From assembly GCA_026770705.1 (NCBI GenBank), contig JANJGN010000102.1, positions 310,001 to 374,000 on the forward strand: 64,000 bases of DNA, read 5' to 3'. Of the stretch, positions 902 through 51,364 are shown piece after piece. Both the position numbers and the translations under genes were made by a program. How positions within the stretch are numbered: position 1 is the stretch's first letter; each line of letters opens with the position of its first letter. The notes under the pieces are model-generated. The model was given only the letters and a program-made list of their open reading frames with translations, made no database searches and had not been told where the DNA came from. The stretch comes from Isurus oxyrinchus. Taxonomy: Eukaryota.

Positions 902-964
902 GCCATCTCAAATGGCACATTTTGGGGTTAATGGCTGTTGGTGAGTGGAGACTGACAGGTCCTT

Positions 965-2245: not shown

Positions 2246-2399
2246 TGACACTTAGTCCGTTTTTAGGTGACAGTGGCCGTCACCCTCTAAATATCACACA
2301 CCAGATGTCATGCTGCACACATCTTAACCATTCTTGCAAATGATTAATTCAAAGCAGAGAGAAAGAGGGAGAGAGAGAGAGAGGAATTCTAGTCAAGGG

Positions 2400-3452: not shown

Positions 3453-5065
3453 AGGTACCTCACCAGTCCTACTCCGGCCCCCTTCCACAACTCTTTCTCC
3501 GGTACATCGATGATTACTTCGGTGCTGCTTCATGCTCTCGTCAGGACTTGGAAAAATTTATTAATTTTGCTTCCAATCTCCATCCCTCCATCATTTTCAC
3601 GTGGTCCATCTCTGACACTTCCCTTCCCTTCCTTGACCTCTCTGTCTCAATCTCTGGTGATAGACTATCCACCAATATCCATTACAAACCTACCGACTCC
3701 CACAGCTACCTCGATTACAGCTCCTCACACCCCGCTTCCTGTAAGGACTCCATCCCATTCTCCCAGTTCCTTCGCCTCCGTCGCATCTGTTCCAATGATG
3801 CTACCTTCAAAAACAGTTCCTCTGACATGTCCTCCTTCTTCCTTAACCGAGGTTTTCCCCCCACGGTCGTTGACAGGGCCCTCAACCATGTCTGGCCCAT
3901 CTCCCGCGCATCCGCCCTAACGCCTTCTCCTCCCTCCCAGAAACATGATAGGGTCCCCCTTGTCCTCATTTATCACCCCACCAGCCTCCGCATTCAAAGG
4001 ATCATCCTCCGCCATTTCCACCAACTCCAGCATGATGCCACCACCAAACACATCTTCCCTTCACCCCCCTTATCGGCATTCCATAGGGATCGTTCCCTCT
4101 GGGACACCCTGGTCCACTCCTCCATCACCCCCTACTCCTCAACCCCCTCCTATGGCACCACCCCATGCCCACGCAAAAGATGTAACACCTGCCCCTTCAC
4201 TTCCTCTCTCCTCACCATCCAAGGGCCCAAACACTCCTTTCAAGTGAAGCAGCATTTCACTTGCATTTCCCCCAACTTAGTCTACTGCATTCATTGCTCC
4301 CAATGTGGTCTCCTCTACATTGGAGAGACCAAATGTAAACTGGGCGACCGCTTTGCAGAACACCTGCGGTCTGTCTGCAAGAATGACCCAAACCTCCCTG
4401 TCGCTTGCCATTTTAACACTCCACCCTGCTCTCTTGCCCACATGTCTGTCCTTGGCTTGCTGCATTGTTCCAGTGAAGCCCAACGCAAACTGGAGGAACA
4501 ACACCTCATCTTCCGACTAGGCACTTTACAGCCTTCCGGACTGAATATTGAGTTTAACAACTTTAGGTCTTGAACTCCCTCCTCCATCCCCACCCCCTTT
4601 CTGTTTCTTCCCCCTTCCTTTTGTTTCTTCCAATAAATTATATAGATTTTTCTTTTCCCACCTATTTCCATTATTTTTAAATATTTTAAAATCTTTTATG
4701 CTCCCCCCACCCCCACTAGAGCTATACCTTCCATTCTTAATTAGCACATTCATTTCGATAATGTCACCAACTTCAACACCTGTGTTCTTTTGTTCTGTTG
4801 TCTGTGACATCGTTTGATGATCTGCTTCTATCACTGCTTGTTTGTCCCTACAACCACACCACCCCAACCCCGCCACCACACACACACACACCTTAAACCA
4901 ACTTATATTTCACCCCTTCCTTGGATTCACCTAGTTCTGTTGAAGGGTCATGAGGACTCGAAACATCAACTCTTTTCTTATCCGCCGATGCTGCCAGACC
5001 TGCTGAGTTTTTCCAGGTAATTCTGTTTTTGTTTTGGATTTCCAGCATCCGCAGTTTTTTTGTTT
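3453..5065 (+). mobile_element. Penelope-like retroelement, 5'-truncated (RT C-terminus, GIY-YIG endonuclease, terminal tail)
   Basis: ORF 3548-4573 has NLVYCIHCSQCGLLYIGET...RFAEH (GIY-YIG) and ends PSGLN; RYIDD lies just upstream. 12-bp TSD TTACCTCACACT at 3441-3452 and 5066-5077. Confidence 0.93.
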
Positions 5066-5459
5066 TTACCTCACACTTCTCTGGTTTAAATTCCATTTGC
5101 CACTTCTCTGCCCACTAAACCAAACTTTCTTTTGCCAATCGCCTTAAATCTGTCTCCTCTGGTTCTCGATCCTTCCACCAAGTTTCTCCCTATCTACTCT
5201 GTCCCAGGCCCTTCATGATTTTCAAAGTGGAATTGTTATATTTTATCATAAGATATTCCAAACCATCTTTGATTAATAAGCTAAAGCATGAATGTCTGAA
5301 TATGACTGATTGCACCTATGCTATTTACTTTATTAACTACAATAGCTGAGGGAACACAATATTTCACTTAATATCCAAAGCACATATTCTGCTTGGGCTT
5401 GCCAGTGTGCAAATAAATCATCGCAATTGAATTCCTTGGTGCAACGTTTCTTGTATACG

Positions 5460-5556
5460 ATGGTAACTCAACGGACCTGCACCAGCTGTCTTCCTTTATT
5501 CTGCATTATTTTTGGGATAATAGGGGTGTCCTTTACCTAGCATTCACAGCAGCAGG
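5460..5556 (+). pseudogene. Candidate degenerate leader exon of the MHC alpha (WA) pseudogene
   Basis: ATG at 5460 gives MVTQRTCTSCLPLFCIIFGIIGVSFT* (hydrophobic core, TAG at 5538). No intact GT donor; position is upstream of the alpha1 exon. Confidence 0.3.
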
Positions 5557-5609
5557 GAAACCAGCCAATCCCCCTCCCTTTTCTTTTCTGTTCCAATCTC
5601 ACTCAGCCA

Positions 5610-6360
5610 CCGCCCCTCACTTCTTCTTCCAGTACATTGATGATAGCCGCTTCCTGTGCTGGCCCGGAACTGGAACATTTCAATCAACTTTGCTTCCAAT
5701 CTCCACCTTATGTTCAGTCCACGAGCATCACCCTGAGATTCTGGTCGCCTGTCTCTTTAATTTTCCACCTCACTCTGACTCTGACCTCCCTGCCCTAGGT
5801 CTGTGGCACTGTTCTGACTCTGACCTCCCTGTCCTCGGTCTGCAGCACCGTTCTGACTCTAACCTCCCTGCCCTCGGCCTGCGGCGCCATTTTGACTCTG
5901 ACTTCCCCGTCCTTGGTCTGCGGCGCCGTTCTGACTCTGACCTCCCTGCCCTCGGACTGTGGCACCATTCCAATGAAGCTCAAGGAGTAACACCTCATCT
6001 TTTGATTAGTCGCTTTACAGCCTTCTGGACTCAACATTGAGTTCAACAATTTTAGATCATAATCTCTATTCTCATTCTTTGGGCGGCAGCTGTTGGTGAT
6101 GATTCTATGTTTCCCGTTTACACCTCCTCTAGACCTATCATCTGTTTCTATCTCTTGTCTCATTACCATCTTTTTTGCCCTTGCGCCCTCAGCATTTGTC
6201 ATTTAATCTCTCCCGTCCCCTCTACCCTATCCCAGACCTTCACTTTTATTCTTCCTACCCCTCCCCACCCCTCTGTATTTGTTTGAAACCTGTCACCTCT
6301 CTTTCCCCAGCTCCAATGTAAGGTCTTCGAGCTTGAATGTTAACCCTGTTTCCCTCGCCA
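5610..6360 (+). mobile_element. Old Penelope-like fragment containing a 39-bp tandem amplification (5770-5975)
   Basis: QYIDD-like and ...PSGLNIEFNNFRS-like remnants; about five copies of CTGACTCTGACCTCCCTGCCCTCGGTCTGCGGCACCGTT. Confidence 0.7.
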
Positions 6361-6429
6361 GCATTACTGCCTTGGCTCTGGACCATTCCTGGCTTTTTCA
6401 GAGTCCCTTACTTATGCTTGTGTGTTTAT

Positions 6430-7510
6430 TTTCTATTCCTTCTTGGGATGTAAGTGTCGCTGGCGAACCGGCATTTGCTGCCCACCCCAAATTGCTTCTT
6501 GAACTGAGTGTCTCACTAGAGCCACTTCAGAGGGGCCAATTAAGAGTCAGCCACATTGCTGTGGGCCTGGAGTCACATGTAGGCCAGACTGGGTTAGGAT
6601 GGCAGATTTCCTTACCTGAAGGGACAGTGAACCAGATGGGGTTTTTACACCAATTCAGTAATCTCATGATTATATCAGCTTTTTAAATTCTGGGTTTATT
6701 AATGAATTTCATTTACATTTCCCCAGCTGCCATGGTGGGATTTGAATTCATGGGCAGGATTTTTTGAATGGGTCCCGCGCCATCACCCACAGAGTCAATG
6801 GGGACACTACCTCGCTGATCCTGGCAGCTGTTGAACACTCCATGAGGCTTTCGTTGTCTAAGTTTGAGGCCATTGCCTCACCACCACCCCCATCCCCCCC
6901 CCACCCCAAACCTGGGGAGGGGGAGCCATCGTAAGAGAGCTGCTGGTTAACCTGATTGGCTGACAGAACTATAGTCCCAGCAGCGCCACGTTTGAGTGGT
7001 GCCCACTGCTAAGGCTACAGCCAGTCCTCGAAGAGGAGGTTATGAAGGCCGGTGTTTTTTTTATTCTTTCATGGGATGTGGGCATCGCTGGCTAGACCAG
7101 CAACTATTGCCACCCCCTATTGACCTTGAGAAGGTGGTGGTGAGTCACCTTCTTGAACTACTGCAATCCCTGTGCTGTAGGTACACCCACAGCACTACTA
7201 GGGAGGGAGTTCCAGGATTTTGACCCAGCGACAGTGGAGGAACGGCTGATGTATTTCCAAGTCAGATGGTGAGTGGGTCGGAGGGGAGCTCACAGGCGGT
7301 AGTGTTCCCATGTGTCTGCTGCCTTTGTCCTTCTAAGTAGTAGTGGTCGCGTGTTTGGGCGGGAATGTCACAGGAGCCTTGGTGAGTTGCTGCAATGCAT
7401 CTTGTCGATGGTACACACACTGCTGCCCCTGTGTGTCGGAGGGAGTGAATGTTAAAGGTGTGGATGGGGTGTCGAACAAGCAGGGTGGCTTTGTCTTGGA
7501 TGATGCCCAT
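6430..7510 (-). mobile_element. HE1-type SINE and HER1/CR1-type LINE 3' fragments
   Basis: Same sequence blocks recur at 26480-28190, 43975-44270, 56870-57290 and 63570-64000. Confidence 0.7.
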
Positions 7511-7794
7511 GGAGTGGCCAGCTAAAGAGCCTCAACAGGTCCAGGGGGCCCCACATCTCCACTGCCCCCCCCCCCCCCACCCCCCCTCCCCGATCCGCCC
7601 CTCCATAAGATAAGAGACAGCTCGGAGTGGGTGGGTACGTGGCAGACAGGCCACGTACTGCATATCACCAGCAGTGCCACCGGGTTCGCAAGTGGGGGGG
7701 AACCATAAAACCATGGCTCTGGATTATGAGCCCAGTGACATCCACAGTAAGTTACCATCCCCTGAAGCTGATCCCAATTATTTTTCACTTCTAG

Positions 7795-8042
7795 CAGAGC
7801 AAAGAGTGCGGGGGATGATTTTCAGCGTCTCTGACAGCCGGACCTCCATCGTCACCTCGACCAATGATGACATGACCCTCGCCTACCATAACAGCACCGA
7901 GTCCAACTTGTGTTCCTTACCGAGGCGCTGAACGCGCTCCATGCCGAGTCAAACAATCTCATCCAGAAATACCAGAGCTATCTGACATTGAATGAAATCG
8001 TTCTCAACGAAATGGCGAACCGCATCCCGGAGAAACAAAACG
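7795..8042 (+). pseudogene. MHC W-category alpha chain (WA) alpha1 exon, 1-bp deletion near 7907
   Basis: Acceptor TTTTTCACTTCTAG, donor G|GTAATT, phase 1-1, 248 nt (3n-1). Repaired translation AEQRVRGMIFSVSDSRTSIVTSTNDDMTLAYHNSTESNxVFLTEALNALHAESNNLIQKYQSYLTLNEIVLNEMANRIPEKQN. Splices in frame (GAC) to the Ig exon. Confidence 0.8.
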
Positions 8043-8249
8043 GTAATTTGAATAGTCACTTGGTGGTACGGAATATGAGCATTGGTGAAAAACAGACATG
8101 ATGTTGAAACTTTTTGTCTCACAATCATCAGGATAGATGGAAGAATACCAAATTTCAAAGGGGAGAGAGAACAAAGAATGACACTAAGAACTACACCAAT
8201 GACCATTTTTAAATTATCAGTAGGATTCGCACATACACATGCTAGAAGC

Positions 8250-8530
8250 TACATATATTCATATGCAGGGACCTGCCCTCTGCAGACAGAAGGAACGTAT
8301 CCAGCCATGGCACCTTTTTCGAATTAAATAAAAGTGTGAGGGACAAAAGCTCCCTGGTGCATTCTCCATGGCAACACCTTGACAATAAGAGTTGACTTTC
8401 CAGCCAATCAGCACCCTATTCTCATGCAGTATAAATTGTTGCTCCCTCAGAAATTTGGCATTCTTGCTTCTGTCCTGGTGAGTCCAAGAGAAAAAGCTTT
8501 GACAGCATGTTTCTTTTCTCAGCAATCCTC
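8250..8530 (+). mobile_element. Terminal fragment of a second putative Penelope-like family (degenerate hammerhead-like motif at ~8475-8500)
   Basis: Reverse-complement homolog of 57670-57980; motif CTGGTGA-GTCCAAGAG-AAAAAGCTT. Confidence 0.5.
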
Positions 8531-8759
8531 AAATGCTGTACTGTCAGGTGACCAGTCTTTAATTCTATGATTCCTTTCTCAATTACCTCATGCTCCCCCT
8601 CATAGAGTTATACAGCACAGAAACAGGCCCTTCAGCCCGTATTTGTCTCAATTTGAGATATCCCATCCACCCCAACGCCTGCTTTATGCTCAGTTCTCAA
8701 TCCTCCTCCCTTACTTATTGGAACATCCCGGGAGCTCCAAGACGGTGAGGCACTAGGCT

Positions 8760-9385
8760 CGGGACACGAGTCAAGGAACAGGGGAGGCCATTCAGCCCCT
8801 TGAGCCTGCATCACCATTCAATCCAATCATGGCTGATCTACAACCTAATTCCATTTTAGGCCACACCTGGAGTCACTGTGAGCAGTTCTGGGCATCACAC
8901 CTTCGGAAAGATATGCTGACCTCGGAGAGGGTTCTGTGTTGATTGACCAGAATGATCCCTGGACTCCAAGGGTTAAATTCTGAGGAGAGGTATCAGAAAC
9001 TATGCTCATATTCCCTGGAATTGAGAAGGTTAAGGGGGTGATCTGAACAAAGTTTTCAAGATATTCATGGGAACTGATAGCTCCGATTGAGATGGACCGT
9101 TTCCCGCTGGTTGGTGGGGGGGCGGGGTGGGGGGGGGGGGGGGGGGGAGGGGGGTGTAGGGTAGTCTGGGACAAGGGGGCAGAGTCTGAAAATGAGAGGT
9201 AGACCCTTCAGGAGTGAAGTGAGGAAAGACTCCTACACACAAAGGGTAGTTGGAGTTTGAAACTCTCTTCCCCAAATGGCCATTGATGCCGGGTCAACTG
9301 TTACTTTTAAATCTGTGAGATTGAGATTTTTGCTAACCAAAGGTTTTAAGGGATACTGGGCGAAGGCAGGTAGGTGGAGATAGGT
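8760..9385 (+). mobile_element. CR1 3' fragments hosting the second Penelope copy (resume at 11489-11550)
   Basis: CR1-like RPHLE..QFW and YTQRVVGV remnants; sequence resumes after the TSD. Confidence 0.75.
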
Positions 9386-11488
9386 AAAACAAAAACAGAA
9401 TTATCTGGAAAAACTCTGCAGGTCTGGCAGCATCGGCGGAGAAGAAAAGAGTTGATGTTTCGAGTCCTCATGACCCTTCGACAGAACTTGAGTTCGAGTC
9501 CAAGTAACAGCTGAAATATAAGCTGGTTTAAGGTGTGTGTGTGGGGGGGCGGAGAGATAGAGAGAGAGAGAGAGGTTTGGGGGGGGTGTGGTTGTGTGGA
9601 CAAACAAGCAGTGATAGAAGCAGATCATCAAAAGATGTCAACGACAATGGTACAATAGAACACATAGGTGTTAAAGTTAAAGTTGGTGATATTATCTAAA
9701 CAAATGTGCTAATTAAGAATGGATGGTAGGGCACTCAAGGTACAGCTCTAGTGGGGGTGTTTTTTTTTATAATGGAAATAGGTGGGAAAAGGAAAATCTT
9801 TATAATTTATTGGAAAAAAAAGGAAGGGGGAAACAGAAAGGGGGTGGGGATGGGGGAGGGAGCTCACGACCTAAAGTTGTTGAATTCAATATTCAGTCCG
9901 GAAGGCTGTAAGGTGCCTAGTCGGAAGATGAGGTGTTGTTCCTCCAGTTTGCGTTGGGCTTCACTGAAACAATGCAGCAAGCCAAGGACAGACATGTGGG
10001 CAAGAGAGCAGGGTGGAGTGTTAAAATGGCAAGCGACAGGGAGGTTTGGGTCATTCTTGCGGACAGACCGCAGGTGTTCTGCAAAGCGGTCGCCCAGTTT
10101 ACGTTTGGTCTCTCCAATGTAGAGGAGACCACATTGGGAGCAACGAATGCAGTAGACTAAGTTGGGGGAAATGCAAGTGAAATGCTGCTTCACTTGAAAG
10201 AAGTGTTTGGGCCCTTGGACGGTGAGGAGAAAGGAAATGAAGGGGCAGGTGTTACATCTTTTGCGTGGGCATGGGGTGGTGCCATAGGAGGGGGTTGAGG
10301 AGTAGGGGGTGATGGAGGAGTGGACCAGGGTGTCCCGGAGGGAGCGATCCCTATGGAATGCCGATAAGGGGGGTGAAGGGAAGATGTGTTTGGTGGTGGC
10401 ATCATGCTGGAGTTGGCGGAAATGGCGGAGGATGATCCTTTGAATGCGGAGGCTGGTGGGGTGATAAGTGAGGACAAGGGGGACCCTATCATGTTTCTGG
10501 GAGGGAGGAGAAGGCGTGAGGGCGGATGCGTGGGAGATGGGCTGGACACGGTTGAGGGCCCTGTCAACGACCGTGGGTGGAACACCTCGGTTAAGGAAGA
10601 AGGAGGACATGTCAGAGGAACTGTTTTTGAAGGTGGCATCATCAGAACTGATGCGATGGAGGCGAAGGAACTGAGAGAATGGAATGGAGTCCTTACAGGA
10701 AGCGGGGTGTGAGGAGCTGTAGTCGAGGTAGCTGTGGGAGTCGGTGGGTTTGTAATGGATATTGGTGGACAGTCTATCACCAGAGATTGAGACAGAGAGG
10801 TCAAGGAAGGGAAGGGAAGTGTCAGAGATGGACCACGTGAAAATGATAGAGGGGTGGAGATTGGAAGCAAAATTAATAAATTTTTCCAAGTCCCGACGAG
10901 AGCATGAAGCGGCACCGAAGTAATCATCGATGTACCGGAGAAAAAGTTGTGGAAGGGGGCCGGAGTAGAACTGCAACAAGGAATGTTCCACATACCCCAT
11001 AAAGAGACAGGCATAGCTGGGGCACATGCGGGTACCCATAGCCACACCTTTTATTTGGAGGAAGTGAGAGGAGTTGAAGGAGAAATTGTTCAGCGTGAAA
11101 ACAAGTTCAGCCAGACGGAGGAGAGTAGTAGTGGATGGGGATTGTTCGGGCCTCTGTTCGAGGAAGAAGCTAAGGGCCCTCAGACCATCCTGGTGGGGGA
11201 TGGAGGTGTAGAGGGATTGGACGTCCATGGTGAAGAGGAAGCGGTTGGGGCCAGGGAACTGGAAATTGTTGATGTGATGTAAGGTGTCAGAGGAATCATG
11301 GATGTAGGTGGGAAAGGACTGGACAAGGGAGAGAGAAGGGAGTCAAGATAACGAGAAATGAGTTCTGTGGGGCAGGAGCAAGCTGAGACGATCGGTCTAC
11401 CGGGGCAGTTCTGTTTGTGGATTTTGGGTAGGAGATAGAAGCGGGCCGTCCAAGGTTGGGCGACTATCAGGTTGGAAGCTGTGGGAGA
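9386..11488 (-). mobile_element. Penelope-like retroelement, 5'-truncated (RT, GIY-YIG, tail)
   Basis: ORF 9864-11228 with [24 protein letters not shown] and the GIY-YIG block. 15-bp TSD TAGGTGGAGATAGGT at 9371-9385 and 11489-11503. Confidence 0.95.
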
Positions 11489-11639
11489 TAGGTGGAGATA
11501 GGTGACAGATCAGACATGATCTCGCTGAATGGTCAAAGTCTTCCTGTTCTGTCTATTTGGGGGGTGATCTGCTTAATTTTGAAGATGCGAGCTCTGCTGC
11601 TAACACCCCCTTTCAAGTTTTTAACCTTGTGCCTTCCAG

Positions 11640-11919
11640 ACGACCCCATAGTGTTGCTTTATCCGGATGAACCCTTCACCTTAGTGGGGGAAGAACACCC
11701 TGAATTGTTTTGTGAGTCATCTGTTTCCGCCAGTGGCCCATGTGTCCTTCCTGAAGAACGATCAGCCCCTATCGGGGCAATTGAGGTCCTCGCAGTTCAC
11801 CTTCGACAACAGCTGGACGTTTTAAATCTTGAAATATGTGCAAATTGAGCCTGCTGTTGGGGACAAGTATTCGTGTGTGGTGGAGCTAGTCACCAAGGAG
11901 CAGTTCCGAGCCTACTGGG
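11640..11919 (+). pseudogene. MHC W-category alpha chain (WA) alpha2 Ig-C1 exon, beta-2-microglobulin-like; +1 frameshift at ~11685 and TAA at 11823-11825
   Basis: Acceptor CCTTCCAG, donor G|GTACAG, 280 nt. Repaired: DDPIVLLYPDEPFTLGGKNTLNCFVSHLFPPVAHVSFLKNDQPLSGQLRSSQFTFDNSWTF*ILKYVQIEPAVGDKYSCVVELVTKEQFRAYW. Both Ig Cys present; equivalents of B2M F56, W60, F62 and W95 present. Confidence 0.9.
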
Positions 11920-14900
11920 GTACAGTCCATCATTAAAACTGGGGTACATTGATCATTAACACTGGGGTACACTGATCATTAACACTGGAGTATGCTGATC
12001 ATTAACACTGGGGTACAGTCCATCATTAACACTGGGGTACACTGATCATTAACACTGGGGTACACTGATCATTAACACTGGGGTACACTTATCATTAACA
12101 CTGGGGTACAGTCCATCATTAACACTGGGGTTACAGTCCATCATTAACACTGGGATATACTGATCATTAACACTGGGTTTCACTTATCATTAACACTGGG
12201 ATACACTAACCATTAACACTGGGATACACTGATCATTAACACTGGGGTTCATTTATCATTAACACTGGGATACACTGATCATTAACACTGGGGTTCACTG
12301 ATCATTAACACTGGAGTATGCTGATCATTAACACTGGGGTACAGTCCATCATTAACACTGGGGTTACAGTCCATCATTAGCACTGGGATACACTTATCAT
12401 TAACACTGGGGTACAGATCATCATTAACACTGGGGTACAGTCCATCATTAACACTGGGATATACTGATCATTAACACTGGGTTTCACTTATCATTAACAC
12501 TGGGATACACTAATCATTAACACTGGGATACACTGATCATTAACACTGGGGTTCATTTATCATTAACACTGGGATACACTGATCATTAACACTGGGGTTC
12601 ACTGATCATTAACACTGGAGTATGCTGATCATTAACACTGGGGTACAGTCCATCATTAACACTGGGGTACACTGATCATTAACACTGGGGTACACTGATC
12701 ATTAACACTGGGGTACACTTATCATTAGCACTGGGATACACTTATCATTAACACTGGGGTACAGATCATCATTAACACTGGGGTACAGTCCATCATTAAC
12801 ACTGGGATATACTGATCATTAACACTGGGGTTCACTTATCATTAACACTGGGATACACTAATCATTAACACTGGGATACACTGATCATTAACACTGGGGT
12901 TCATTTATCATTAACACTGGGATACACTGATCATTAACACTGGGGTTCACTGATCATTAACACTGGGATATACTGATTATTAACACTGGGATACACTTAT
13001 CATTAACACTGGCATACACAGATCATTAACACTGGGGTACAGATCATCATTAACACTGGGGTATAGTCCATCATTAACACTGGGGTATAGTCCATCATTA
13101 ACACTGGGGTATAGTCCATCATTAGCACTGGGATACACTTATCATAAACACTGGGGTACAGTCCATCATTAACACTGGGGTACAGTCCATCATTAACACT
13201 GGGATATACTGATCATTAACACTGGGGTTCACTTATCATTAACACTGGGATACACTAATCATTAACACTGGGATACACTGATCATTAACACTGGGGTTCA
13301 TTTAACATTAACACTGGGATACACTAATCATTAACACTGGGATACACTGATCATTAACACTGGGTTTCATTTATCATTAACACTGGGGTACAGATCATCA
13401 TTAACACTGGGGTACAGTCCATCATTAACACTGGGGTACAGTCCATCATTAACATTGGGATATACTGATCATTAACACTGGGGTTCACATCATTAACACT
13501 GGGATACACTAATCATTAACACTGGGATACACTGATCATTAACACTGGGGTTCATTTATCATTAACACTGGGATACACTGATCATTAACACTGGGGTTCA
13601 CTGATCATTAACACTGGGATAAACTGATCATTAACACTGGGATAAACTAATCATTAACACTGGGGTACCCTGATCATTAACACTGGGGTACCCTGTTCAT
13701 TAACACTGGGGTACCCTGATCGTTAACACTGGGGTACCCTGATCATTAACACTGGGGTACAGTCCACCATTAACACTGGGGTGCAGTCCATCATTAACAC
13801 TGGGGTACACTGATCATTAACACTGGGGTACAGACCATCATTAACATTGGGGTACAGACCATCATTAACACTGGGATATACTGATCATTAACACTGGGAT
13901 ATACTGATCATTAAGACTGGGGTACCTGATCATTAACACTGGGGTGCAGTCCATCATTAACACTGGCGTACAGTCTGTCATTAACACTGGGATATACTGA
14001 TCATTAACACTGGGATACACTTATTATTAACACTGGGGGACAGTCCGTCATTAACACTGGGATACACTGATCATTAACACTGGGATACATTTATCATTAA
14101 CACTGGGATTCATTTATCATTAACACTGGGATACACTGATCATTAACACTGGGGTTCACTGATCATTAACACTGGGATAAACTGATCATTAACACTGGCA
14201 TACAGTCCTCCATTAACACTGGCATACAGTCCGTCATTAACACTGGGATATACTGATCATTAACACTGGGATATACTGATCATTAACTCTGGGATACACC
14301 GATCATTAACACCGGGGTATGCTGATCATTAACACCAGGGTATGCTGATCATTAACACTGGGGTATGCAGATCATTAACACTGGAGTATGCTGATCATTA
14401 ATACTGGGTTACAGTCCATCATTAACACTGGGGTGCACTGATCATTAACACTGGGTTACAGTCCGTCATTAACACTGGCGTACAGTCTGTCATTAACACT
14501 GGGATATACTGATCATTAACACTGAGATATACTGATCATTAACACTGGGGTACACTGATCAATAACATTGGGATATACTGATCATTAACACTGGGATATA
14601 CTGATCATTAACTCTGGGATACATTTATCATTAACACTGGGATACACTGATCATTAAACTGGGGTTCACTGATCATTAACTCTGGGATACATTTATCATT
14701 AACACTGGGATACATTGATCATTAACACTGCGGTATGCTCATCATTAACACTGGGGTACAGTCCATCATTAACACTGGGGTACACTGATCATTAGCACTG
14801 GGGTACGGTCCGTCATTAACACTGGGATATACTGATCATTAACACTGGGATATACTGATCATTAACACTGGGGTACACTGATCATTAACTCTGGGGTGCA

Positions 14901-15700
14901 CCGATCATTAACACTGGGGTACAGTCGGTCATTAACACTGGTGTATAGCCGTCATTAACACTGGGATATACTGATCATTAACACTGGGATATACTGATCA
15001 TTAACTCTGGGATACATTTATCATTAACACTGGGATACACTGATCATTAACACCGGGGTATACTGATCATTAACACTGGGGTATGCTGATCATTAACACT
15101 GTGGTATGCTCATCATTAACAATGGGGTACAGTCCATCATTAACACTGGGGTACACTGATCATTAGCACTGGGGTACGGTCCATCATTAATACTGGGATA
15201 TACTGATCATTAACACTGGGATATCCTGATCATTAACACTGGAGTACAGTCCGTCATTAACACTGGGATATACTGATAATTAACACTGCGATATCCTGAT
15301 CATTAACACTGGGGTACACTGATCATTAACTCTGGGGTGCACCGATCATTAACTCTGGGATACAGTCCGTCATTAACACTGGCGTATAGCCGTCATTAAC
15401 ACTGGGATATACTGATCATTTACACTGGGATAAAGTGATCATTAACACTGGGGTACACTGACCATTAACACTGGGATACACTGATCATTAACACTGGGCT
15501 ACACTGAACCTTAGTACTGGGATACACTGATCATTAGCACCGGGGTTTACTGAACATTAGCACTGGGGTACAATCCATCATTAACACTGGGATATACTGA
15601 TCATTTACACTGGGGTACAATGCATCATTAACACTGGGGTACACTGATCATTAACATTTGGGTAAAGTCCATCATTCACAGTGGGATACAGTATGTCATT
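11914..15700 (+). repeat. 23-24-bp minisatellite (CATTAACACTGGGGTACACTGAT variants), ~160 units
   Basis: Direct inspection; the array begins in the last codons of the alpha2 exon. Confidence 0.95.
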
Positions 15701-15719
15701 AACAGTGCGACACAGTAAC

Positions 15720-16335
15720 TGACAGACAAGGCACAAACTGACAGACAGACATTTACAGACTGACAGACAGGCAGAGACGAATGGACAGACATAGACTGCG
15801 AGGTAGACAGGTGCAGACTGAGACAGATAGACACAGACTGATGGAAAGATTCACAGGCAGACATTGACAGCCGGTAAAAACACACTGAAAGACAGATACA
15901 CACAGGGCAGACAGGGGTTTCAGACCCATTCACAACAGCAGAGGTGAAGGTAGACACGGTCAGAGACAGACACACACACACACACCACACACACAGTCAA
16001 ACACACACACACAATCACAGACACACACAGTCATAAACGCGCACTGTCACAAACACAGTCACAAAGATACACACTGTCATATATATGCACACTCATAAAC
16101 GCACACACAATCACAGACACACACACTCTTAACATGCAGTCACAGGCACACACATAGTCACAAACTCACGCCGTCACAAACACACACATAGTCACAAACT
16201 CACACAGTCACAAACACACACAGTCAAAGACATACACAGTCACAAACACACACAGTCACAGACACACACAGTCACAAGCACGCACAGTCGCAAACTCACA
16301 GTCACAAACACACGCAGTCAAAGACATACACACAG
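15720..16335. repeat. GACA/CA-rich low-complexity repeat
   Basis: Direct inspection. Confidence 0.85.
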
Positions 16336-17926
16336 AGCAGAATTTTACATCTCGCAGACGAGTCCCCACCCGACGTGATTGGGTGTAAAATAGTGCGCGA
16401 TGACATCAGGTGAGCGTCCCGACGTCATCCTGCGCTCACACGATATTTTGCTCAGTGAGCGCACATGGGAGTCGGAGCCGTGCCCATCATCAATTAGAAG
16501 GCTGCTTCAGGCCATTAAAAAGGCAATTGACCAAGGTTTCACGTTGCCTGCGATTTCGCGCTCGTTGCACGGGTAGGTGGGCAGCCGACATTTTTGCAAA
16601 ACCTCATCCAAGGACGGGATAAAAAGGGTTAGCAGCATTGCCAGTGTGAGGACTTTGGTAGATAGTTTGCTGCCGGTTCCTTATTGGTACTTGGCAGCTT
16701 CATCTCTGTCCAGGGCTTCATTGGTAGCATTTCCAGGCTGGATGTGAGGACTCCTTGATGTTTTCAAGGCTCCTGGAGGATCTTGACCGTATAGACCCTT
16801 CCAAGTGTGACCCTGGTAATGGGGATTGTGCTCCCCGCTGGAGGCACCTCCTCTGAAGAGGAAGAGAGGGGCAGAAGGGAGAGGAGGCCTGCTATCCCAA
16901 TGCAGCTTCTGGGGGGAGCGACCTGTGGGTGGAAAGGTGCAGGCACAGCGGGCACAGAGCCAGCAGGTATCCCACAGTGGAAGGGGCCTCAGTGGACGCC
17001 ACTATCCTGCTGCCAGAGTTTACAGTGGGAGTGCAGCTACATCAATATGTCCAGCTGACCCACTGGTGCCTTGATGGCCACATGTGTGCAGTCGATGGTA
17101 TCCTGGACGCAGGGGAACCTAGCAATCATTGCAAAGCCTCTGGCTCACTCAACCTGGCTGGCCTCGTTTGTACGGAAATGAATAACTGTCAGTGCCCACC
17201 TGATCAGAGCTTCTCTCACCAGCTTCATGCAACTGTGAACAGCTGATTGGGAGACTCCACACAGATTCCCCACTGACCCCTGGAAAGTGCCAGAGGCATA
17301 GAAGTTGAGGAGCACTGTGGCCTTCAGAGCCACTGGCTTGGGGTGTCCACCCACACAACCGGAGATGATCTCAGATCCAGTCATCTGGCAAACGGAGGTC
17401 ACGGTCTCCCTTGAGAGGCAGAGCCTCCTTCGGCATTGCACCTCGGACATATAGAGGTAGCTGCATCGCCGCCTGTAAACCCTAGCAGCAGGATAGTGGC
17501 ATCTTCTGCAGCCCCTTCTGCCTTGGACTACCTGCTGGCCCTGCACCCCCTATGCCTGCACCTCTCATCCCACAGGTCGCTCCCCTGGAGGCTGAATATC
17601 GACACCTGGCCTCCTCCCCCTTCTGCCCCTCTCTTCCTCCTCAGAGGAGGTGCCTCCAGCGGAGACCACAATATCCATTACCAGGGTAACAAGAGGATGT
17701 CTGATACCTGGAAGGGTCCACACGATCTGAATTCTCCAGGGTCCTTAGAGACACCAAGGAGTCCCCAATTGAAGCCTGGAAATGCTAACAATGAAGCCCC
17801 GAACAGAGATGAAGCTGCTATATACCAATAAGTCACCAGCAGCAAACTATCTACCACACTCCTCACTTCTCACGCTGGCAATGCTGCTGACCCTTTTTAT
17901 CCCATCCATGGATGAGGTTTTTGAAA
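16336..17926. mobile_element. PIF/Harbinger-type DNA transposon remnants, two fragments in opposite orientation
   Basis: Minus ORF 17145-17546 ...VALKATVLLNFYASGTFQGSVGNLCGVSQSAVHSC... matches the Harbinger/HARBI1 transposase N-terminal motif. GCAGAATTTT-type terminus at ~16338. 16730-17050 is an inverted homolog of 17440-17760. Confidence 0.8.
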
Positions 17927-17974
17927 AAAGACACAGTCACAAACAAACACACACACAGTCACAAACACAGTCGC

Positions 17975-18017
<43 letters not shown>

Positions 18018-19001
18018 TAGAGTCACAGACACACTCAGTCACAAACAAAGTCACACACACACACACAGTCACAAACATGCTTAGTCACAAACACAGTCAC
18101 AAACAAACACACACAGTCTCAAACACAGTCACGCACGCACACACAGTCACAAACACGCTTAGTCACGAAGAGAGTCACGCACGCACACACAGTCACAAGC
18201 ACGCTCAGTCACAAACAAAATCACGCATGCACACACACACAGTCACAAACACGCTTAGTCACAAACACAGTCACAAACAAACACACACAGAGTCACAAAC
18301 ACGCTCAGTCACAAACAGTCACAAACAAACACACACAGGCACAAACACGCTTAGTTACAAACAGTCACAAACAAACACACACGCAGTCTCAAACACAGTC
18401 GCGCACGCGCACACACACGGTCACAAACACGCTCAGTGACACACAGTCACAAGCATGCTCAGTCACAAACAAAATCACGCACGCACACACACGCAGTCAC
18501 AAACACGCTTAGTCACAAACAGAGTCACAAACAAACACACACAGAGTCACAAACACAATCGCGCACGCACACACACACACAGTCACAAATACGCTCAGTC
18601 ACAAACAGTCACAAACAAACACACACAGAGTCACAAACACAGTCTCGCACGCACGCGCACACACAGTCACAAACACGCTCAGTCACAAACACAGTCACAA
18701 ACAAACACACACAGGCACAAACACGCTTAGTTACAAACACAGTCACAAACAAACATACACACACAAAGTCACAAACACGCTCAGTCACAAACAGTCACGC
18801 ACAAACACACATGCACACGCACACACACACACACACACACAGTCAAAAATATGCTCAGTCACAAAAACAGTCACGCACGCACACACACACACACACAGTC
18901 ACAAACACGCTTAGTTACAAACACAGTCACGCATGCACACACAAAACACTCACAAACACAGTCACGCACAAATACACACACACACACACACACACACACA
19001 C

Positions 19002-19117
19002 GGCAGAATTTTATGACAGCAGGGATTTTACGTTCCCGCTGTTGTCAATGGCATTTATAACAGCCCGCCGCATTTTACGGCCCTGTCCCCGTGGTAACGG
19101 GGCCGTAAAATTCTGCC
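19002..19117. mobile_element. 116-bp MITE, copy 1
   Basis: 12-bp TIR GGCAGAATTTTA ... TAAAATTCTGCC, same end type as the Harbinger remnants. Confidence 0.75.
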
Positions 19118-19672
19118 CACACAGTCACAAACATGCTCAGTCACAAACACAGTCATGCACAAATACACATACACACACACACATACACAGTCAAAATCAT
19201 GCTCAGTCACAAACACAGTCACGGACAAACACACACATACAGACAAAAACATGCTCAGTCACAAACTCAGTCACGCATGCACACAGACACACACACGGTC
19301 ACAAACACGCTTAGTCACACAGTCACAAAGACGCTCAGTCACAAACAAAGTCATGCACGCGCACACACACAGTCACAAACATGCTTAGTCACAAACACAG
19401 TCACAAACAAACACACACAGAGTCACAAACACAGTCTCGCACGCACGCGCACAAACGGTCACAAACATGCTCAGTCACAAACACAGTCACAAACAAACAC
19501 ACATAGGCACAAACACGCTTAGTTACAAACACAGTCACAAACAAACACATACACACACACAGTCACAAACACGCTCAGTCACAAACAGTCACGCACAAAC
19601 ACACATGCACACACACACACACACACACACACACAGTCAAAAATATGCTCAGTCACAAAAACAGTCACGCAT

Positions 19673-19705
<33 letters not shown>

Positions 19706-19807
19706 CACAAACACGCTTAATTACAAACACAGTCACGCATGCACACACAAAACACTCACAAACACAGTCACGCACAAATACACACACACACACACACACA
19801 CACACAC

Positions 19808-19923
19808 GGCAGAATTTTATGACAGCAGAGATTTTACGTTCCCGCTGTTGTCAATGGCATTTATAATGCCCCGCCGTATTTTACGGCCCTGTCCCCATGG
19901 TAACAGGGCCATAAAATTCTGCC
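19808..19923. mobile_element. 116-bp MITE, copy 2 (part of the tandem duplication)
   Basis: Same TIRs and same flanks as copy 1, offset 806 bp. Confidence 0.75.
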
Positions 19924-20421
19924 CACACAGTCACAAACATGCTCAGTCACAAACACAGTCATGCACAAATACACATACACATACACACACATACACAGTC
20001 AAAGTCATGCTCAGTCACAAACACAATCACGGACAAACACGCACATACAGACAAAAATATGCTCAGTCACAAACTCAGTCACGCATGCACACACACACAC
20101 ACAGTCACAAACACAGTCACACACAAGCACACATACACACAGTCACAAACATGCTCAGTCACAAACACAGTCACACATTCACACAGTCACAAACATGCTC
20201 AGTCACAAACAGTTACACACACAGTCACACAGTCACAAACACACAATCACAGTCACAGACATACACACAAAGTCACAAATCTGCTCAGTCAAACAAGTCA
20301 CGCATACACACACATACACAAACAATGCACACACACAAACGTGTACACACAGACTCATACAAGCGCACACATATTACATACAAATACAGAATTAAACTAA
20401 CTAATACCCTTTGATTTACAG

Positions 20422-20542
20422 AGGCAACAACGTCAATCATAAAAACCCAGTACAGATTGCAATCTGCGCAGTCGGCTTTGTGATTGGTGCCCTGGGAATG
20501 ATGACTGGCATCTGCCTGATTTTCTACTAGCGGGGAAATGAG
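20422..20542 (+). pseudogene. WA connecting-peptide/TM exon (class II alpha-type TM), frameshift near exon start
   Basis: Acceptor TTGATTTACAG; NNVNHKNPVQIAICAVGFVIGALGMMTGICLIFY*RGNE then GTAAAT. CxxGxxxGxxGxxxG is the class II alpha TM motif. TAG at 20528-20530. Confidence 0.85.
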
Positions 20543-20814
20543 GTAAATCGATTTAATTGTCTCTGGGGGCGGATATCTCTGACCTTCCAGCCAAACAAAT
20601 TGCTGAGAAATGGGTTTCTCTCCAAACTCCTCTTTGTTAATGAACTATGCTCAGCACCGGCAACAATCAGCACAGGAGAAATTAAACTGTTCACGGTGGA
20701 ATGAGTTTGAGGTTGTTTGTATTGATTACTCAAATCTCACACCAAACTGCATGGGGTAGGGTAAAACTTGAATGAGACCAGTAAAGAACTCTGTTCTCAG
20801 TTGAAAATTTGTTG

Positions 20815-22628
20815 GGGACGGTGTAGAGGGAGCTTTACTCTGTATCTAACCCCGTGCTGTACCTGTCCTGGGAGTGTTTGATGGGGACGGTGTGGAGGGA
20901 GCTTTACTCTGTATCTAATCCCGTGCTGTACCTGTCCTGGGAGTGTTTGATGGGGACAGTGTAGAGGGAGCTTTACTCTGTATCTAACCCTGTGCTATAC
21001 CTGTCCTGGGAGTGTTTGATGGGGACAGTGTAGAGGGCGCTTTACTTTGTATCTAACTCCGTGCTGTACCTGTCCTGAGAGTGTTTGATGGGGATGGTGT
21101 AGAGGGAGCTTTACTCTGTATCTAACCCTGTGCTGTACCTGTCCTGGGAGTGTTTGATGGGGACAGTGTAGAGGGAGCTTTACTCTGTATCTAACCCCGT
21201 GCTGTACCTGTCTTGGGAGTTTGATGGGGACAGTGCCCCATGCTGTACCTGCCCTGGGAGCGTTTCATGGGGACAGTGTAAAGGGAGCTTTACTCTGTAT
21301 CTAACCCCGTGCTGTACCTGTCCTGGGAGTGTTTGATGGACACGGTGTAGAGGGAGTTTTAAACTTTATCAAAACCCGTGCTGTACCTGTCCTGGGAGTG
21401 TTTGATGGGGACGGCATTGAGGGAGCTTTACTCTGTATCTAACCCCATGCTGTACCTGCCCTGGGAGTGTTTGATGGGGACAGTGTAGACAGAGCTTTAC
21501 ACTGTATCTGACCCCATGCTGTACCTGTCCTGGGAGTGTTTGATGGGGACGGTGTGGAGGGAGCTTTACTCTGTATCTAATCCCATGCTGTACCTGTCCT
21601 GGGAGTGTTTGATGGGGACAGTGTAGAGGGAGCTTTACTCTGTATCTAACCCCGTGCTGTGCCTGTCCTGGGTGTGTTTGATGGAGACGGTGTAGAGGGA
21701 GCTTTACTCTGTATCTAACCCCGTGCTGTACCTGTCCTGGGAGTGTTTGATGGGGACAGTGTAGAGGGAGCTTTACTCTGTATCTAACCCCGTGCTGTAC
21801 CTGTCCTGGGAATGTTTCATGGGGACAGTGTAGAGGGAGCTTTACTCTGTATCTAACCCCGTGCTGTACCTGTCCTGGGAGTGTTTGATGGGGACGGTGT
21901 GGAGGGAGCTTTACTCTGTATCCTACTCCGTGCTGTACCTGTCTTGGGAGTGTTTGATGGGGACGGTGTGGAGGGAGCTTTACTCTGTATCTAATCCCAT
22001 GCTGTACCTGTCCTGGGAGTGTTTGATGGGGACAGTGTAGAGGGAGCTTTACTCTGTATCTAACCCCGTGCTGTGCCTGTCCTGGGTGTGTTTGATGGAG
22101 ACGGTGTAGAGGGAGCTTTACTCTGTATCTAACCCCGTGCTGTACCTGTCCTGGGAGTGTTTGATGGGGACAGTGTAGAGGGAGCTTTACTCTGTATCTA
22201 ATCCCGTGCTGTACCTGTCCTGGGAATGTTTCATGGGGACAGTGTAGAGGGAGCTTTACTCTGTATCTAACCCCGTGCTGTACCTGTCCTGGGAGTGTTT
22301 GATGGGGACGGTGTGGAGGGAGCTTTACTCTGTATCCTACCCCGTGCTGTACCTGTCTTGGGAGTGTTTGATGGGGACAGTGTAGAGGGAGCTTTACTCT
22401 GTATCTAACCCCGTGCTGTACCTGTCCTGGGTGTGTTTGATGGGGACGGTGTAGAGGGAGCTTTACTCTGTATCTAACCCTGTGCTGTACCTGTCCTGGG
22501 AGTGTTTGATGGGGACAGTGTAGAGGCAGCTTTATACCATATATAACCCCGTGCTGTACCTGTCCTGGGAGTGTTTCATGGGGACGGTGTAGAGAGAGCT
22601 TTACACTGTATCTAACCCTGTGCTTCAA
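20815..22628 (-). repeat. 69-bp satellite array (~26 units)
   Basis: Reverse complement of the unit at 1-901; source of the 23-aa-periodic ORF 21369-22628. Confidence 0.95.
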
Positions 22629-24826
22629 TACCCCTGGACTAAGGAGGCTTCAGACATCCTGGTTCCCTGATCTCCTTGCCAGTGAGCCCTATCCATTTGG
22701 GACAGTTTCGGTTTGGCTATAGTCCTACCTCCAAGGTCGATTAGCCTACCGAGATCTACCACATGCATGAAGAACAGCTGCCAGGGTGTGCTATCTGAGG
22801 CCCATGGAAACTACAGCCCTTAAAGCAGCAGGGGAGAACGGCGGGTGGGCAGAATATTGAATCTGATGGCTGGGTGCTCGGTTTGGCAGACACCCAGCAC
22901 TACAAATATCTTTTGTCACAAATAAGGTGGGGTCCAGGGATCAGCAAACCATACCTGCGGAGGAGCCACAGGACTCGATGCTGAATGGAGAAGGGGCACA
23001 AGATGAAGGGACCCGTGTGGATCGGAGTGATCCAAACCAACCAGCAGAATGTTGAGCCAATCTGTGTCCTAATCTGATTTCACACACACACTCTTGTTCC
23101 TCAAAACTGTGTTTCCTTCAAAAAAAATTACATAATTTCTGCAAACGTGATACTGTTTTATTGTTAATTTTNNNNNNNNNNNNNNNNNNNNNNNNNNNNN
23201 NNNNNNNNNNNNNNNNNNNNNNNNNNNNNNNNNNNNNNNNNNNNNNNNNNNNNNNNNNNNNNNNNNNNNNNNNNNNNNNNNNNNNNNNNNNNNNNNNNNN
23301 NNNNNNNNNNCTCTCTCCCTGCCACTTTGAGGTTTGAAAGCACTTCCTCATTCCAGGGATGAGGAACTTGAGTAACATAGAATCGTTGGCTGGCACAGCA
23401 CAGAAGGAGGTCATTCAGCTCATCGTGCCTGTGCTCTCTGTTTGAAAGAGTGGTCCAATTGGTCCCCTATTCTCCAAGGCTAAAATTTTTCCCCTTCAAG
23501 TATTTCTCCAATTCCCCCTTTTTGAGCGTGAATCTGCTTCCACTGCCCTTTCAGGCAGTGCCTTCCAGATAACAACTCGCTGCGTCAAAAAAATTCTCCT
23601 CATTTCCCCCTCTGGTTCTTCCACCGATTCTCTCCAATCTGTTTGCACCACCCAATCCACGCCCCCCCCCCCCCCCCACCCCCCCTCTGGTTACCGCCCC
23701 ACCTGCCACTGGAAACAGTTTCTCCTTATTTACTCAATTGAAACCTTTCATGATTTTGGATGCCTCGATTCAATCTCCCCTTTAACCTTCTCTGCACCAA
23801 GGAGAACAATCCCAGCTTCTCCAGTCCCTCCACATGAACTGAGGTCCCCTCATCCCCGGGAACCGTTCTGGTAAATCTCCTGTGCCTTCCCTGGTACAGG
23901 AGATGGTACTGAGGGAGTTCCGTGGATGGATTGGAGAAGTTGGGAGTGTTCTCCTTGGGAAGAGAAAGTTGAGAGGAGATTTGAAAGAGGTGTTCAAAAT
24001 CTCAAGAGGCTCTGGGACAGAGTAGATAGGGAGAAACTGTTCCCATTGGCGGAAGGATTGAAAACCAAAGGGACACAGATTTAAGGCGGTTGGTAAAAGA
24101 AGCAATGGGGACATGAGGAGAAACTTTTTCATGCAGTGAGTGGTTAGGATCTGGAATGTGCTGCCTGAGAATGTGGTGGAGGCAGGGTCAATCGAGGCTT
24201 TCCGAAGGGGAATTGGTTCATTATCTGAAAAGGAAGAATGTGCAGGGTTACGGGGAGAAGCCATGGGATGGCACCAGTTGAATTGCTCATGCAGAGAGCC
24301 AGTGCAGACACGATGAGCCAAATGGCTTGCTCCCCGTGACGTAGCAATTTGGTGATTCTGATTAACTGCCCAGAGATGCTCACATCTGTGGACGGCAGCT
24401 GAAGACTATGGTTGATTCTGCTGCCTTCACATGCGTTTTGAGCGCAGAGTCGAAGACCGAGAACATAGGAGGCCATTCAGCCCCTCAGGTCTATTCCCCC
24501 ATTCAACAAGATCACGGCTGATCTGTGACCTATATCCAGATACCCACCTTTGCCCCAAATCCCTTAATACCTTTGGCTAACAAAAATCTCTCAATCTCAG
24601 TTTAAAATTAACTGACCCGGCATTAATTGCCATTTGGTGAAGAGAGTTCCAAACTCCGACCACCCTTTGTGTGTCGAAGTCTTTCCTCATTTCACTCTCA
24701 TTTTTGGACTCTGCCCTCTCATCCCAGGCTTCCCCAACCAGCGGGAAACAGTTTCCCTCTGTCAACACTCTCAGTTCCCCTTAATGTCCTGAAAACTTTG
24801 ATTAAATCACTCCCTGAATCTTCTAA
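21488..24826 (+). repeat. Source segment of the inverted duplicate at 31910-35051
   Basis: Near-identical ORFs in opposite orientation (e.g. 23782-24321 vs 32415-32954). The diagnostic satellite variant at 21488-21520 matches 35019-35051. Confidence 0.93.
23172..23310. other. Assembly gap (139 N)
   Basis: N run; the equivalent position in the inverted copy holds a (CA)n microsatellite (~33431-33490). Confidence 0.98.
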
Positions 24827-33429: not shown

Positions 33430-33479
<50 letters not shown>

Positions 33480-36297: not shown

Positions 36298-36522
36298 GGG
36301 GACGGTGTAGAGGGAGTTTTGCTCAGTATCTAACCCCGTGCTGTACCTGTCCTGGGAGTGTTTGATGGGGACTGTGTAGAGGGAGCTTTACTCTGTATCT
36401 AACCCCGTGCTGTACCTGTCCTGGGAGTGTTTGATGGGGACGGTGTAGAGGGAGCTTTACTCTGTATCTAACCCTGTGCTGTACCTGTCCTGGGAATGTT
36501 TGATGGGGACAGTGTAGAGGCA
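36298..36522 (-). repeat. 69-bp satellite, ~3 units
   Basis: Direct inspection. Confidence 0.9.
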
Positions 36523-36547
36523 GTTTTATGCCTGTATACTTTGGACT

Positions 36548-51106: not shown

Positions 51107-51364
51107 GAGCACACATTTTGCAGGCACAGTTCTCCATCGAAAAATCTCATCATTCAGCAGTTAGCCTGAGGTTCGCTTATGAAGGAACAGAACTCATCCA
51201 GTTCAACTACATCACCAATCAGTTCGTGGCCACTGAGCCGCTGGCAAAGTCTTTCGCTGAGCAACTTAACAGCGACCAGAAGAAGGTCAGAAGGTACATT
51301 CGCTATGGCTCCTTTGCAAATCTGGTGTCAGATGTGGTTTTACGGGCCACTCGCCAACTGATCG
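51107..51364 (+). pseudogene. MHC W-category beta chain (WB) beta1 exon (open, class I alpha2-like)
   Basis: TTTCTCTTCCTTCCAG / G|GTAAGT, 258 nt, phase 1-1; GAHILQAQFSIEKSHHSAVSLRFAYEGTELIQFNYITNQFVATEPLAKSFAEQLNSDQKKVRRYIRYGSFANLVSDVVLRATRQLI. Confidence 0.87.

What the first reader, a model, noticed from the sequence alone, without database searches (positions are those of the whole stretch)
7795..20542. MHC W-category alpha-chain (WA) pseudogene: class II architecture with a beta-2-microglobulin-like Ig domain
Seen: three spliceable exons missed by the ORF track because each is frameshifted. The Ig exon aligns by eye to human B2M: NTLNCFVS vs NFLNCYVS; SFLKND vs DLLKNG (no canonical Ig Trp); SQFTFDNSWTF vs SDLSFSKDWSF; terminal W. 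The TM has the class II alpha CxxGxxxGxxGxxxG motif. Established: this combination defines W-category alpha chains (Okamura et al. 2021, PNAS). Inference: a dead member, possibly of an uncatalogued subfamily; the alpha1 domain has no Cys.
Basis: partly seen in the sequence, partly recalled or inferred. Interest (0 to 1): 0.85.

Follow-up and report, generated by a model that had tools for sequence, protein, structure and literature searches.

The report
Dead shark W-category MHC alpha gene

Summary
Canonically spliced exons on the + strand encode an alpha1 domain (7795-8042), a C1-set Ig domain (11640-11919) and a connecting peptide/TM (20422-20542). I add an intact cytoplasmic exon (22927-23055).

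All pieces are 82-100% identical (five of six 93-100%) to great white shark XP_041037342. They also carry the W-category marks: Y8, F instead of the Ig core Trp, F57, W61 and the class II alpha TM glycine motif. The family match is to WA_Nds3L, which Okamura et al. named in 2021, so "uncatalogued subfamily" is not supported.

There are five disabling lesions:
- a 1-nt deletion at 7908-9
- an inserted T at 11685
- CAA>TAA at 11823
- a 4-nt deletion at about 20435/6

Contigs from two related lamnid organisms lack the 11685 and 11823 lesions. One probable RNA contig ends exactly at the 11919 donor, so the relatives' copy looks alive and spliced.

The alpha1 deletion is shared with white shark, and Okamura's SI reports the same frameshift. 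A Penelope-like element sits in intron 2. No leader exon and no head-to-head WB partner were found.

The scan already found two intact WA_Nds3L copies of this genome on other DNA. I could not obtain reads from the window's own species. Interest is low.

The parts
7795..8042 (+). alpha1 exon (248 nt, phase 1 to phase 1); the frame changes near the middle
   Evidence: AG at 7793-4 and GT at 8043-4. 97% and 93% identity to P0010 residues 29-66 and 68-111.
7908..7909 (+). Lesion 1: 1-nt deletion (TT where relatives have a full codon: TTT in organism A, GTT in the published corrected white shark sequence)
   Evidence: Exon is 248 nt against the 249 required. X1 contig has +T behind 7907. White shark-like X5 contig has no insertion. 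Okamura SI 2-1-4-3 reports the same missing nucleotide.
9386..11488 (.). Penelope-like retroelement inserted in intron 2, flanked by a 15-bp target-site duplication (9371-9385 and 11489-11503)
   Evidence: 91% identical to 5035-3464, which carries a GIY-YIG ORF. TSD found. White shark contigs X5 rec 20 and X7 rec 25 run from 9370 straight to 11489.
11640..11919 (+). alpha2 Ig C1-set exon (280 nt)
   Evidence: Pfam C1-set E 1.7e-7. 94.8% identity to P0010 over 77 aa. AG at 11638-9 and GT at 11920-1.
11685..11685 (+). Lesion 2: inserted T inside a G run, causing a frameshift
   Evidence: 'Left out 1' at 11685 in contigs X1, X7 and X5. Relatives read TLGGKNTL or TLEGKNTL.
11823..11825 (+). Lesion 3: nonsense codon TAA (CAA, Gln, in relatives)
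   Evidence: T>C at 11823 in X1, X7, X5 and X15. Q at this position in P0010, P0011, P0001 and in Ambystoma WA.
20422..20542 (+). connecting peptide / transmembrane exon (121 nt), with the glycine motif C-x2-G-x3-G-x2-G-x3-G
   Evidence: 89-95% identity to P0010, P0015 and P0011. AG at 20420-1 and GT at 20543-4.
20435..20436 (+). Lesion 4: 4-nt deletion between these bases (relatives read S-D/G-N-H; the window reads TCA|ATCAT)
   Evidence: Exon is 121 nt against the 125 required. The frame shifts between EATTS and HKNPVQ.
20528..20530 (+). Lesion 5: nonsense codon TAG (K in white shark, E in basking shark) directly after the TM helix
20808..22624 (.). 69-bp satellite array inside intron 4
   Evidence: Self-BLAST ladder. 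The same family occurs at 1-903 and 36298-36528.
22927..23055 (+). cytoplasmic-tail exon with stop codon TGA, intact
   Evidence: 42 of 42 residues identical to the P0010 tail.

Best explanation
This is an unprocessed (intron-containing) pseudogene of the shark W-category MHC alpha-chain subgroup WA_Nds3L. It lies in the W-category gene cluster of a lamnid shark closely related to the great white shark.

A live WA chain is a type I membrane protein. Its alpha1 domain forms half of an MHC groove platform. Its alpha2 Ig domain carries beta-2-microglobulin-type contact residues (Y8, F57, W61, and no core Trp). It pairs with a WB chain through class II-type TM glycines.

This copy cannot make that protein. 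Three of its four recognisable coding exons are broken by three frameshifts and two stop codons. No leader exon or promoter-sharing WB partner is seen within 7.8 kb upstream. A retroelement has landed in intron 2.

The most likely history is birth-and-death evolution of a duplicated cluster. A redundant WA_Nds3L copy first lost its frame in alpha1, a lesion shared with a white shark locus. It then decayed further in this lineage.

Shown here: exon structure, family assignment, the lesions, and their absence in relatives. Inferred: the order of events, orthology to the frameshifted white shark locus, and that the copy is non-functional.
For: Exon borders, phases and lengths.

C1-set domain.

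Nearest proteins:
- S. canicula XP_038638474, the named Ambystoma WA_02, and Chiloscyllium and Heterodontus WA.
- 82-100% identity of the six pieces to white shark P0010, five of them 93-100%.
- P0015 matches the published great white WA_Nds3L.

Five lesions against intact lamnid proteins.

Related organisms' DNA contigs lack the 11685 insertion and the 11823 stop, and one lacks the 7908 deletion.

The white shark empty site and a 15-bp TSD date the retroelement insertion to this lineage.

On the window-specific side of the three-way comparison, five of eight exon substitutions change the protein, including the stop codon. That is what relaxed constraint would give.

Two nonsense substitutions, a T inserted into a G run and a 4-nt deletion are not typical long-read assembly errors.
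Against: No reads from the window's own species or individual could be laid. The lesions therefore rest on the assembly plus comparison.

The genome has two intact WA_Nds3L paralogues nearby (earlier notes s1-864173 and s1-864163). The relatives' contigs could be orthologues of those copies and not of this locus.

The cytoplasmic exon and all eight splice dinucleotides are still perfect. The decay is therefore young or the sample of sites is small.

The leader exon might lie beyond the window start.
Confidence: 0.85

Rival explanations
1. The gene is dead only on the assembled haplotype. It would be a polymorphic null allele of a WA_Nds3L locus that is functional in other individuals of the species.
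For: Organism A is 1.4-2.6% divergent from the window and has intact alpha1 and Ig exons. MHC-region haplotypes can differ in gene content. A short X1 contig, identical to the window at half depth, hints at shared alleles (record 3).
Against: Five independent lesions plus a private retroelement insertion imply long neutral decay, which is unusual for a segregating allele. The contigs differ from the window at 1.4-3% everywhere, which fits another species better than another allele.
Confidence: 0.08
2. The gene is functional and the lesions are assembly errors.
For: Relatives have open frames at 11685 and 11823. Splice sites and the last exon are intact.
Against: Five errors in 778 coding bases would be far beyond the error rate of a chromosome-scale assembly. 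Two are base substitutions creating stops, one is a 4-nt deletion and one is a T inside a G run. The alpha1 deletion is seen independently in white shark data.
Confidence: 0.04
3. It is a pseudogene of a conventional class II alpha or DM-alpha gene and not of the W-category.
For: For the ortholog's whole alpha2 domain, class II alpha chains score as high as beta-2-microglobulin in PDB. NCBI names the relatives 'class II histocompatibility antigen alpha chain-like'.
Against: F replaces the Trp that the paper describes as invariant in class II alpha2. W61, F57 and Y8 are present. Pfam MHC_II_alpha does not hit alpha1 of the window pieces or of the intact relatives. The sequence is near-identical to the published WA_Nds3L.
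Confidence: 0.01

Closest known systems
Great white shark WA_Nds3L (Okamura et al. 2021, PNAS, PMC8713811; contig QUOW01001706; RefSeq XP_041035583.1 and the paralogue XP_041035580.1/XP_041037342.1)
   Same: Same exon structure. 82-100% amino-acid identity in every piece (93-100% in five of six). Cys-free alpha1 with an NST glycosylation site. VSFLKND, FTFDNSW, the TM glycine motif and an identical cytoplasmic tail. The published genomic copy also lacks one nucleotide in mid-alpha1, at the same codon.
   Different: The window copy has four further disabling lesions and a Penelope-like insertion in intron 2. No leader exon and no head-to-head WB_DS3-like partner were detected within 7.8 kb upstream. 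In white shark the two start codons are 1742 bp apart.
Beta-2-microglobulin
   Same: C1-set domain without the core Trp (F/L instead). W at the heavy-chain contact position, with F four residues before it. Y near the N-terminus. Beta-2-microglobulins are the best PDB hits of the 44-aa piece.
   Different: B2M is a free single-domain secreted chain. Here the domain is exon 3 of a membrane-anchored class II-type alpha chain. Over the whole domain of the ortholog, class II alpha scores equally well.
Conventional MHC class II alpha chains (e.g. HLA-DQA, H2-A alpha)
   Same: alpha1 / Ig / CP-TM / CY exon order with phase-1 introns. The TM motif CxxGxxxGxxGxxxG aligns glycine for glycine with HLA-DQA in the ortholog.
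   Different: The conserved Trp 37 is missing. The alpha1 is not recognised by Pfam MHC_II_alpha. B2M-type interface residues are present.

Membership tests
W-category MHC alpha chain (WA) | Class II alpha-type gene architecture: alpha1 exon, C1-set alpha2 exon, CP/TM exon(s), phase-1 domain borders | tested here: met
W-category MHC alpha chain (WA) | No Trp at Ig core position 37 (F or L instead) | tested here: met
   C-x13-F in NCFVSHLFPPVAHVSF. Criterion taken from the paper.
W-category MHC alpha chain (WA) | W61 with F/Y57 and L55, the B2M-type interface residues | tested here: met
   QFTFDNSW has W61 and F57. Position 55 is F, not L, exactly as in white shark WA_Nds3L.
W-category MHC alpha chain (WA) | Y8 in alpha2 | tested here: met
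   DDPIVLLYP. Column 8 in the Dataset S2 row of white shark WA_Nds3L.
W-category MHC alpha chain (WA) | Alpha-chain-specific TM glycines | tested here: met
   ICAVGFVIGALGMMTG. The ortholog's TM aligns with the HLA-DQA TM. The 30-aa piece alone finds nothing in PDB.
W-category MHC alpha chain (WA) | alpha2 clusters with WA and B2M, not with IIA, in a tree | not testable with these tools
   No B2M or IIA sequence was obtainable by reference. A WA-only tree places the window next to the white shark sequences at 97% identity. PDB ranking is ambiguous. The published tree is Fig. 7 of PMC8713811; Dataset S2, the alignment used for it, contains a white shark WA_Nds3L row.
W-category MHC alpha chain (WA) | Head-to-head pairing with a WB gene | tested here: not met
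   No WB or leader exon in 1-7794 on either strand. The only WB is WB_DS1-like, 28 kb downstream on the same strand. The partner could lie beyond the window start.
Subgroup WA_Nds3L | Near-identity to the published great white shark WA_Nds3L across alpha1, alpha2, TM and tail | tested here: met
Conventional MHC class II alpha | Invariant Trp 37 in alpha2, and alpha1 recognised as MHC_II_alpha | tested here: not met
   F at position 37. No PF00993 hit for the window pieces or for the intact relatives.
Functional gene | Open reading frame through all coding exons | tested here: not met
   Three frameshifts and two stop codons. Not confirmed with reads of the same individual.

The most novel reading that the evidence does not exclude
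The 1-nt deletion in alpha1 may be one old lesion inherited by two lamnid genera, not an assembly error as the 2021 paper assumed when it 'corrected' the white shark WA_Nds3L sequence. On this reading the published white shark WA_Nds3L locus is itself alpha1-frameshifted. That locus is otherwise intact, and a white shark WA_Nds3L-type copy (paralogue unresolved) is transcribed and spliced. It would be either a slowly decaying expressed pseudogene maintained by gene conversion from its intact paralogue, or a locus with some residual role. The window copy would show the end state of that decay.
Probability: 0.3. Interest if true: 0.3.

Novelty: new member of a known kind. Interest (0 to 1): 0.2.

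Why it matters
The finding adds a dated example of gene death to the shark W-category cluster. That cluster is discussed as a relic of the class I / class II split.

It shows that WA_Nds3L exists as several copies in lamnids, at least one of them decaying.

It also gives a practical caution. The frameshift in the white shark WA_Nds3L genomic sequence, treated in 2021 as something to correct from expressed reads, recurs in an independent run and in another genus. It is therefore probably real, and the expressed reads may come from a paralogue.

For annotation, the locus should be marked as a pseudogene. It does not bear on how W-category molecules work.

Tried and rejected
I could not fetch the white shark or basking shark loci, so orthology could not be settled at the DNA level.
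- A tree with B2M, class II alpha and DM alpha was not possible. A search with the 118-aa Chiloscyllium fragment found nothing. A profile of seven WA proteins returned only WA proteins. All three homology searches are used.
- Pfam finds nothing for the two alpha1 pieces, the last Ig piece or the TM piece.
- PDB finds nothing significant for the alpha1 piece or the TM piece alone.
- The leader exon was sought with four relatives' signal peptides and not found.
- No second WA copy, no WA_DS10-like exon and no second complete C1-set exon exist in the window.
I did not make the joined or repaired spliced protein or send it to any tool.
- The N run 23172-23310 was left alone.
- Read laying covered only 7700-12000. 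The two lesions in the TM exon were therefore not compared with reads.
Full report
**What is in the sequence**

The genome is a shark's. On the + strand there are four exons with canonical AG/GT borders.

| Exon | Coordinates | Length |
|---|---|---|
| alpha1 | 7795-8042 | 248 nt |
| Ig (alpha2) | 11640-11919 | 280 nt |
| connecting peptide / TM | 20422-20542 | 121 nt |
| cytoplasmic, ending in TGA | 22927-23055 | 129 nt |

Intron phases are those of class II alpha genes: phase 1 at both ends of the two domain exons.

The 44-residue piece 11691-11822 alone passes Pfam's C1-set threshold at E 1.7e-7. Its best PDB matches are beta-2-microglobulins (5e-5), narrowly ahead of class II alpha chains (1.6e-4).

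**Family**

I searched 1.84 billion representative proteins with that one piece, using HMMER. It returned six hits. The best four that are real relatives are:
- a Scyliorhinus canicula "class II alpha-like" protein at 80% identity
- Ambystoma tigrinum WA_02, deposited under that name by the discoverers of the W-category
- a Chiloscyllium protein
- a Heterodontus protein

A follow-up search gave great white shark XP_041037342 (P0010), basking shark P0011 and Heptranchias P0012. Identity of the window's pieces to P0010 is as follows.

| Piece | Identity to P0010 |
|---|---|
| alpha1, first piece | 97% |
| alpha1, second piece | 93% |
| Ig, first piece (18 aa) | 82% |
| Ig, second piece | 93% |
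| Ig, third piece | 100% |
| TM | 93% |
| cytoplasmic tail | 42 of 42 residues |

The host is therefore a lamnid shark close to Carcharodon.

White shark has two such genes in RefSeq:
- XP_041035580/1, with a haplotig copy XP_041037342/3
- XP_041035583 (P0015), a 187-aa model that starts at a Met near the end of alpha1

P0015 carries the residues of the published "great white shark WA_Nds3L": DPTVLL, TTSGNH, GGLG and KWGNE. The window gene is thus a member of the WA_Nds3L subgroup named by Okamura et al. 2021 (PMC8713811). It is not an uncatalogued one.

The paper's defining WA features are met:
- Y8 (VLLYP)
- F at the Ig core Trp position
- F57 and W61 (FTFDNSW)
- the alpha-chain TM glycines

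Position 55 is F instead of L, as in white shark WA_Nds3L. Pfam's MHC_II_alpha model does not recognise alpha1 in the window pieces or in the intact relatives scanned, the named Ambystoma WA_02 included.

For the ortholog's whole alpha2 domain, class II alpha and B2M score about equally in PDB. "B2M-like" therefore holds for specific interface and core residues and not for overall similarity.

**Lesions**

Against the intact lamnid proteins and by exon-length arithmetic (248 vs 249, 280 vs 279, 121 vs 125 nt), there are five lesions:
1. One nucleotide is missing at 7908-9.
2. A T is inserted at 11685 in a run of G.
3. CAA has become TAA at 11823.
4. Four nucleotides are missing at 20435/20436.
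5. TAG stands at 20528, where white shark has K and basking shark has E.

All splice dinucleotides and the last exon are intact.

**Comparison with sequencing runs**

No run of the window's own individual was identifiable. The holders are two coded organisms, 1.4-3% divergent from the window.

Organism B matches white shark proteins at nine diagnostic codons.

- In A and B the T at 11685 is absent and 11823 is C, so their Ig exon is open.
- Organism A also has the extra T after 7907, giving an intact alpha1.
- The white shark-like contig X5 has the same 248-nt alpha1 as the window.

Okamura's SI (2-1-4-3) states that the white shark genomic WA_Nds3L [quoted passage not shown]. They corrected it from expressed reads. 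Their corrected sequence places the missing base at exactly this codon. The truncated RefSeq model P0015 fits the same defect.

The alpha1 frameshift is therefore real in white shark. It is either inherited from a common ancestor or recurrent.

A 520-nt contig of X15, probably RNA, aligns to 11743-11919 and leaves the genome exactly at the predicted donor. It carries CAA at 11823. A white shark copy is therefore spliced as predicted.

White shark contigs pass from 9370 directly to 11489. The window's 9386-11488 is a Penelope-like element with a 15-bp target-site duplication, inserted after the lineages split.

On the window-specific side of the three-way comparison, five of eight exon substitutions change the protein, including the stop. 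Exon and intron divergence are alike, at about 2.3%. This agrees with relaxed constraint, although the numbers are small.

**Context**

- No leader exon is detectable in the 7.8 kb upstream. That stretch is satellite and Penelope-like sequence.
- No WB lies head-to-head.
- The only WB gene in the window (51.1-57 kb, same strand) matches white shark WB_DS1-like by eye. Its beta2 exon changes frame and stops after FYPRV. The rest of that exon is nowhere in the window, so it too looks dead.
- Earlier notes of this scan report two intact, transcribed WA_Nds3L copies 14.5 kb and 84.7 kb beyond the window end. I could not see those sequences. They mean the relatives' contigs might be orthologues of an intact paralogue and not of this locus.

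**Conclusion**

This is a duplicated, unprocessed WA_Nds3L pseudogene in a cluster evolving by birth and death (confidence 0.85).

The rivals are:
- a null allele on this haplotype only (0.08)
- assembly error (0.04)
- a conventional class II alpha pseudogene (0.01)

**Limits**

- No tree with B2M, IIA and DMA could be built.
- The joined or repaired protein was deliberately not made or searched.
- The TM-exon lesions were not compared with reads.
- The N run was not touched.

Noticed in passing
window 51107-57022 (+): [quoted passage not shown] Its beta1, TM and first cytoplasmic exons read through. The beta2 exon (from 54603) changes frame after KPSINITTLRLH and stops after PLLLICRVDGFYPRV at 54686. 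The 3' half, with the Y-x-C-x-V-x-H motif, is nowhere in the window. No WA_DS10-like partner lies upstream. It is probably a second pseudogene.
   Followed up: partly
window 9371-11503: A Penelope-like retroelement (9386-11488) with a 15-bp target-site duplication lies in WA intron 2. It is 91% identical to the copy at 3464-5035, which carries a GIY-YIG ORF. White shark contigs show the empty site.
   Followed up: yes
window 21630-24826 and 31910-35047: A 3.1-kb segment is present a second time in inverted orientation at 96-97% identity. It contains part of the intron-4 satellite, the WA cytoplasmic exon and its 3' flank. The exon copy lies at 33756-33628 on the minus strand. The original is interrupted by the N run 23172-23310, which I left alone.
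   Followed up: partly
window 20808-22624, 1-903, 36298-36528: A 69-bp tandem satellite family occupies WA intron 4, the window start (inverted) and a short block at 36.3 kb.
   Followed up: no
white shark proteins P0014 and P0015: RefSeq white shark has two WA_Nds3L-type genes on one 9.47-Mb scaffold. The 2021 paper describes one. The paper's 'corrected' alpha1 may have used transcripts of the paralogue.
   Followed up: partly
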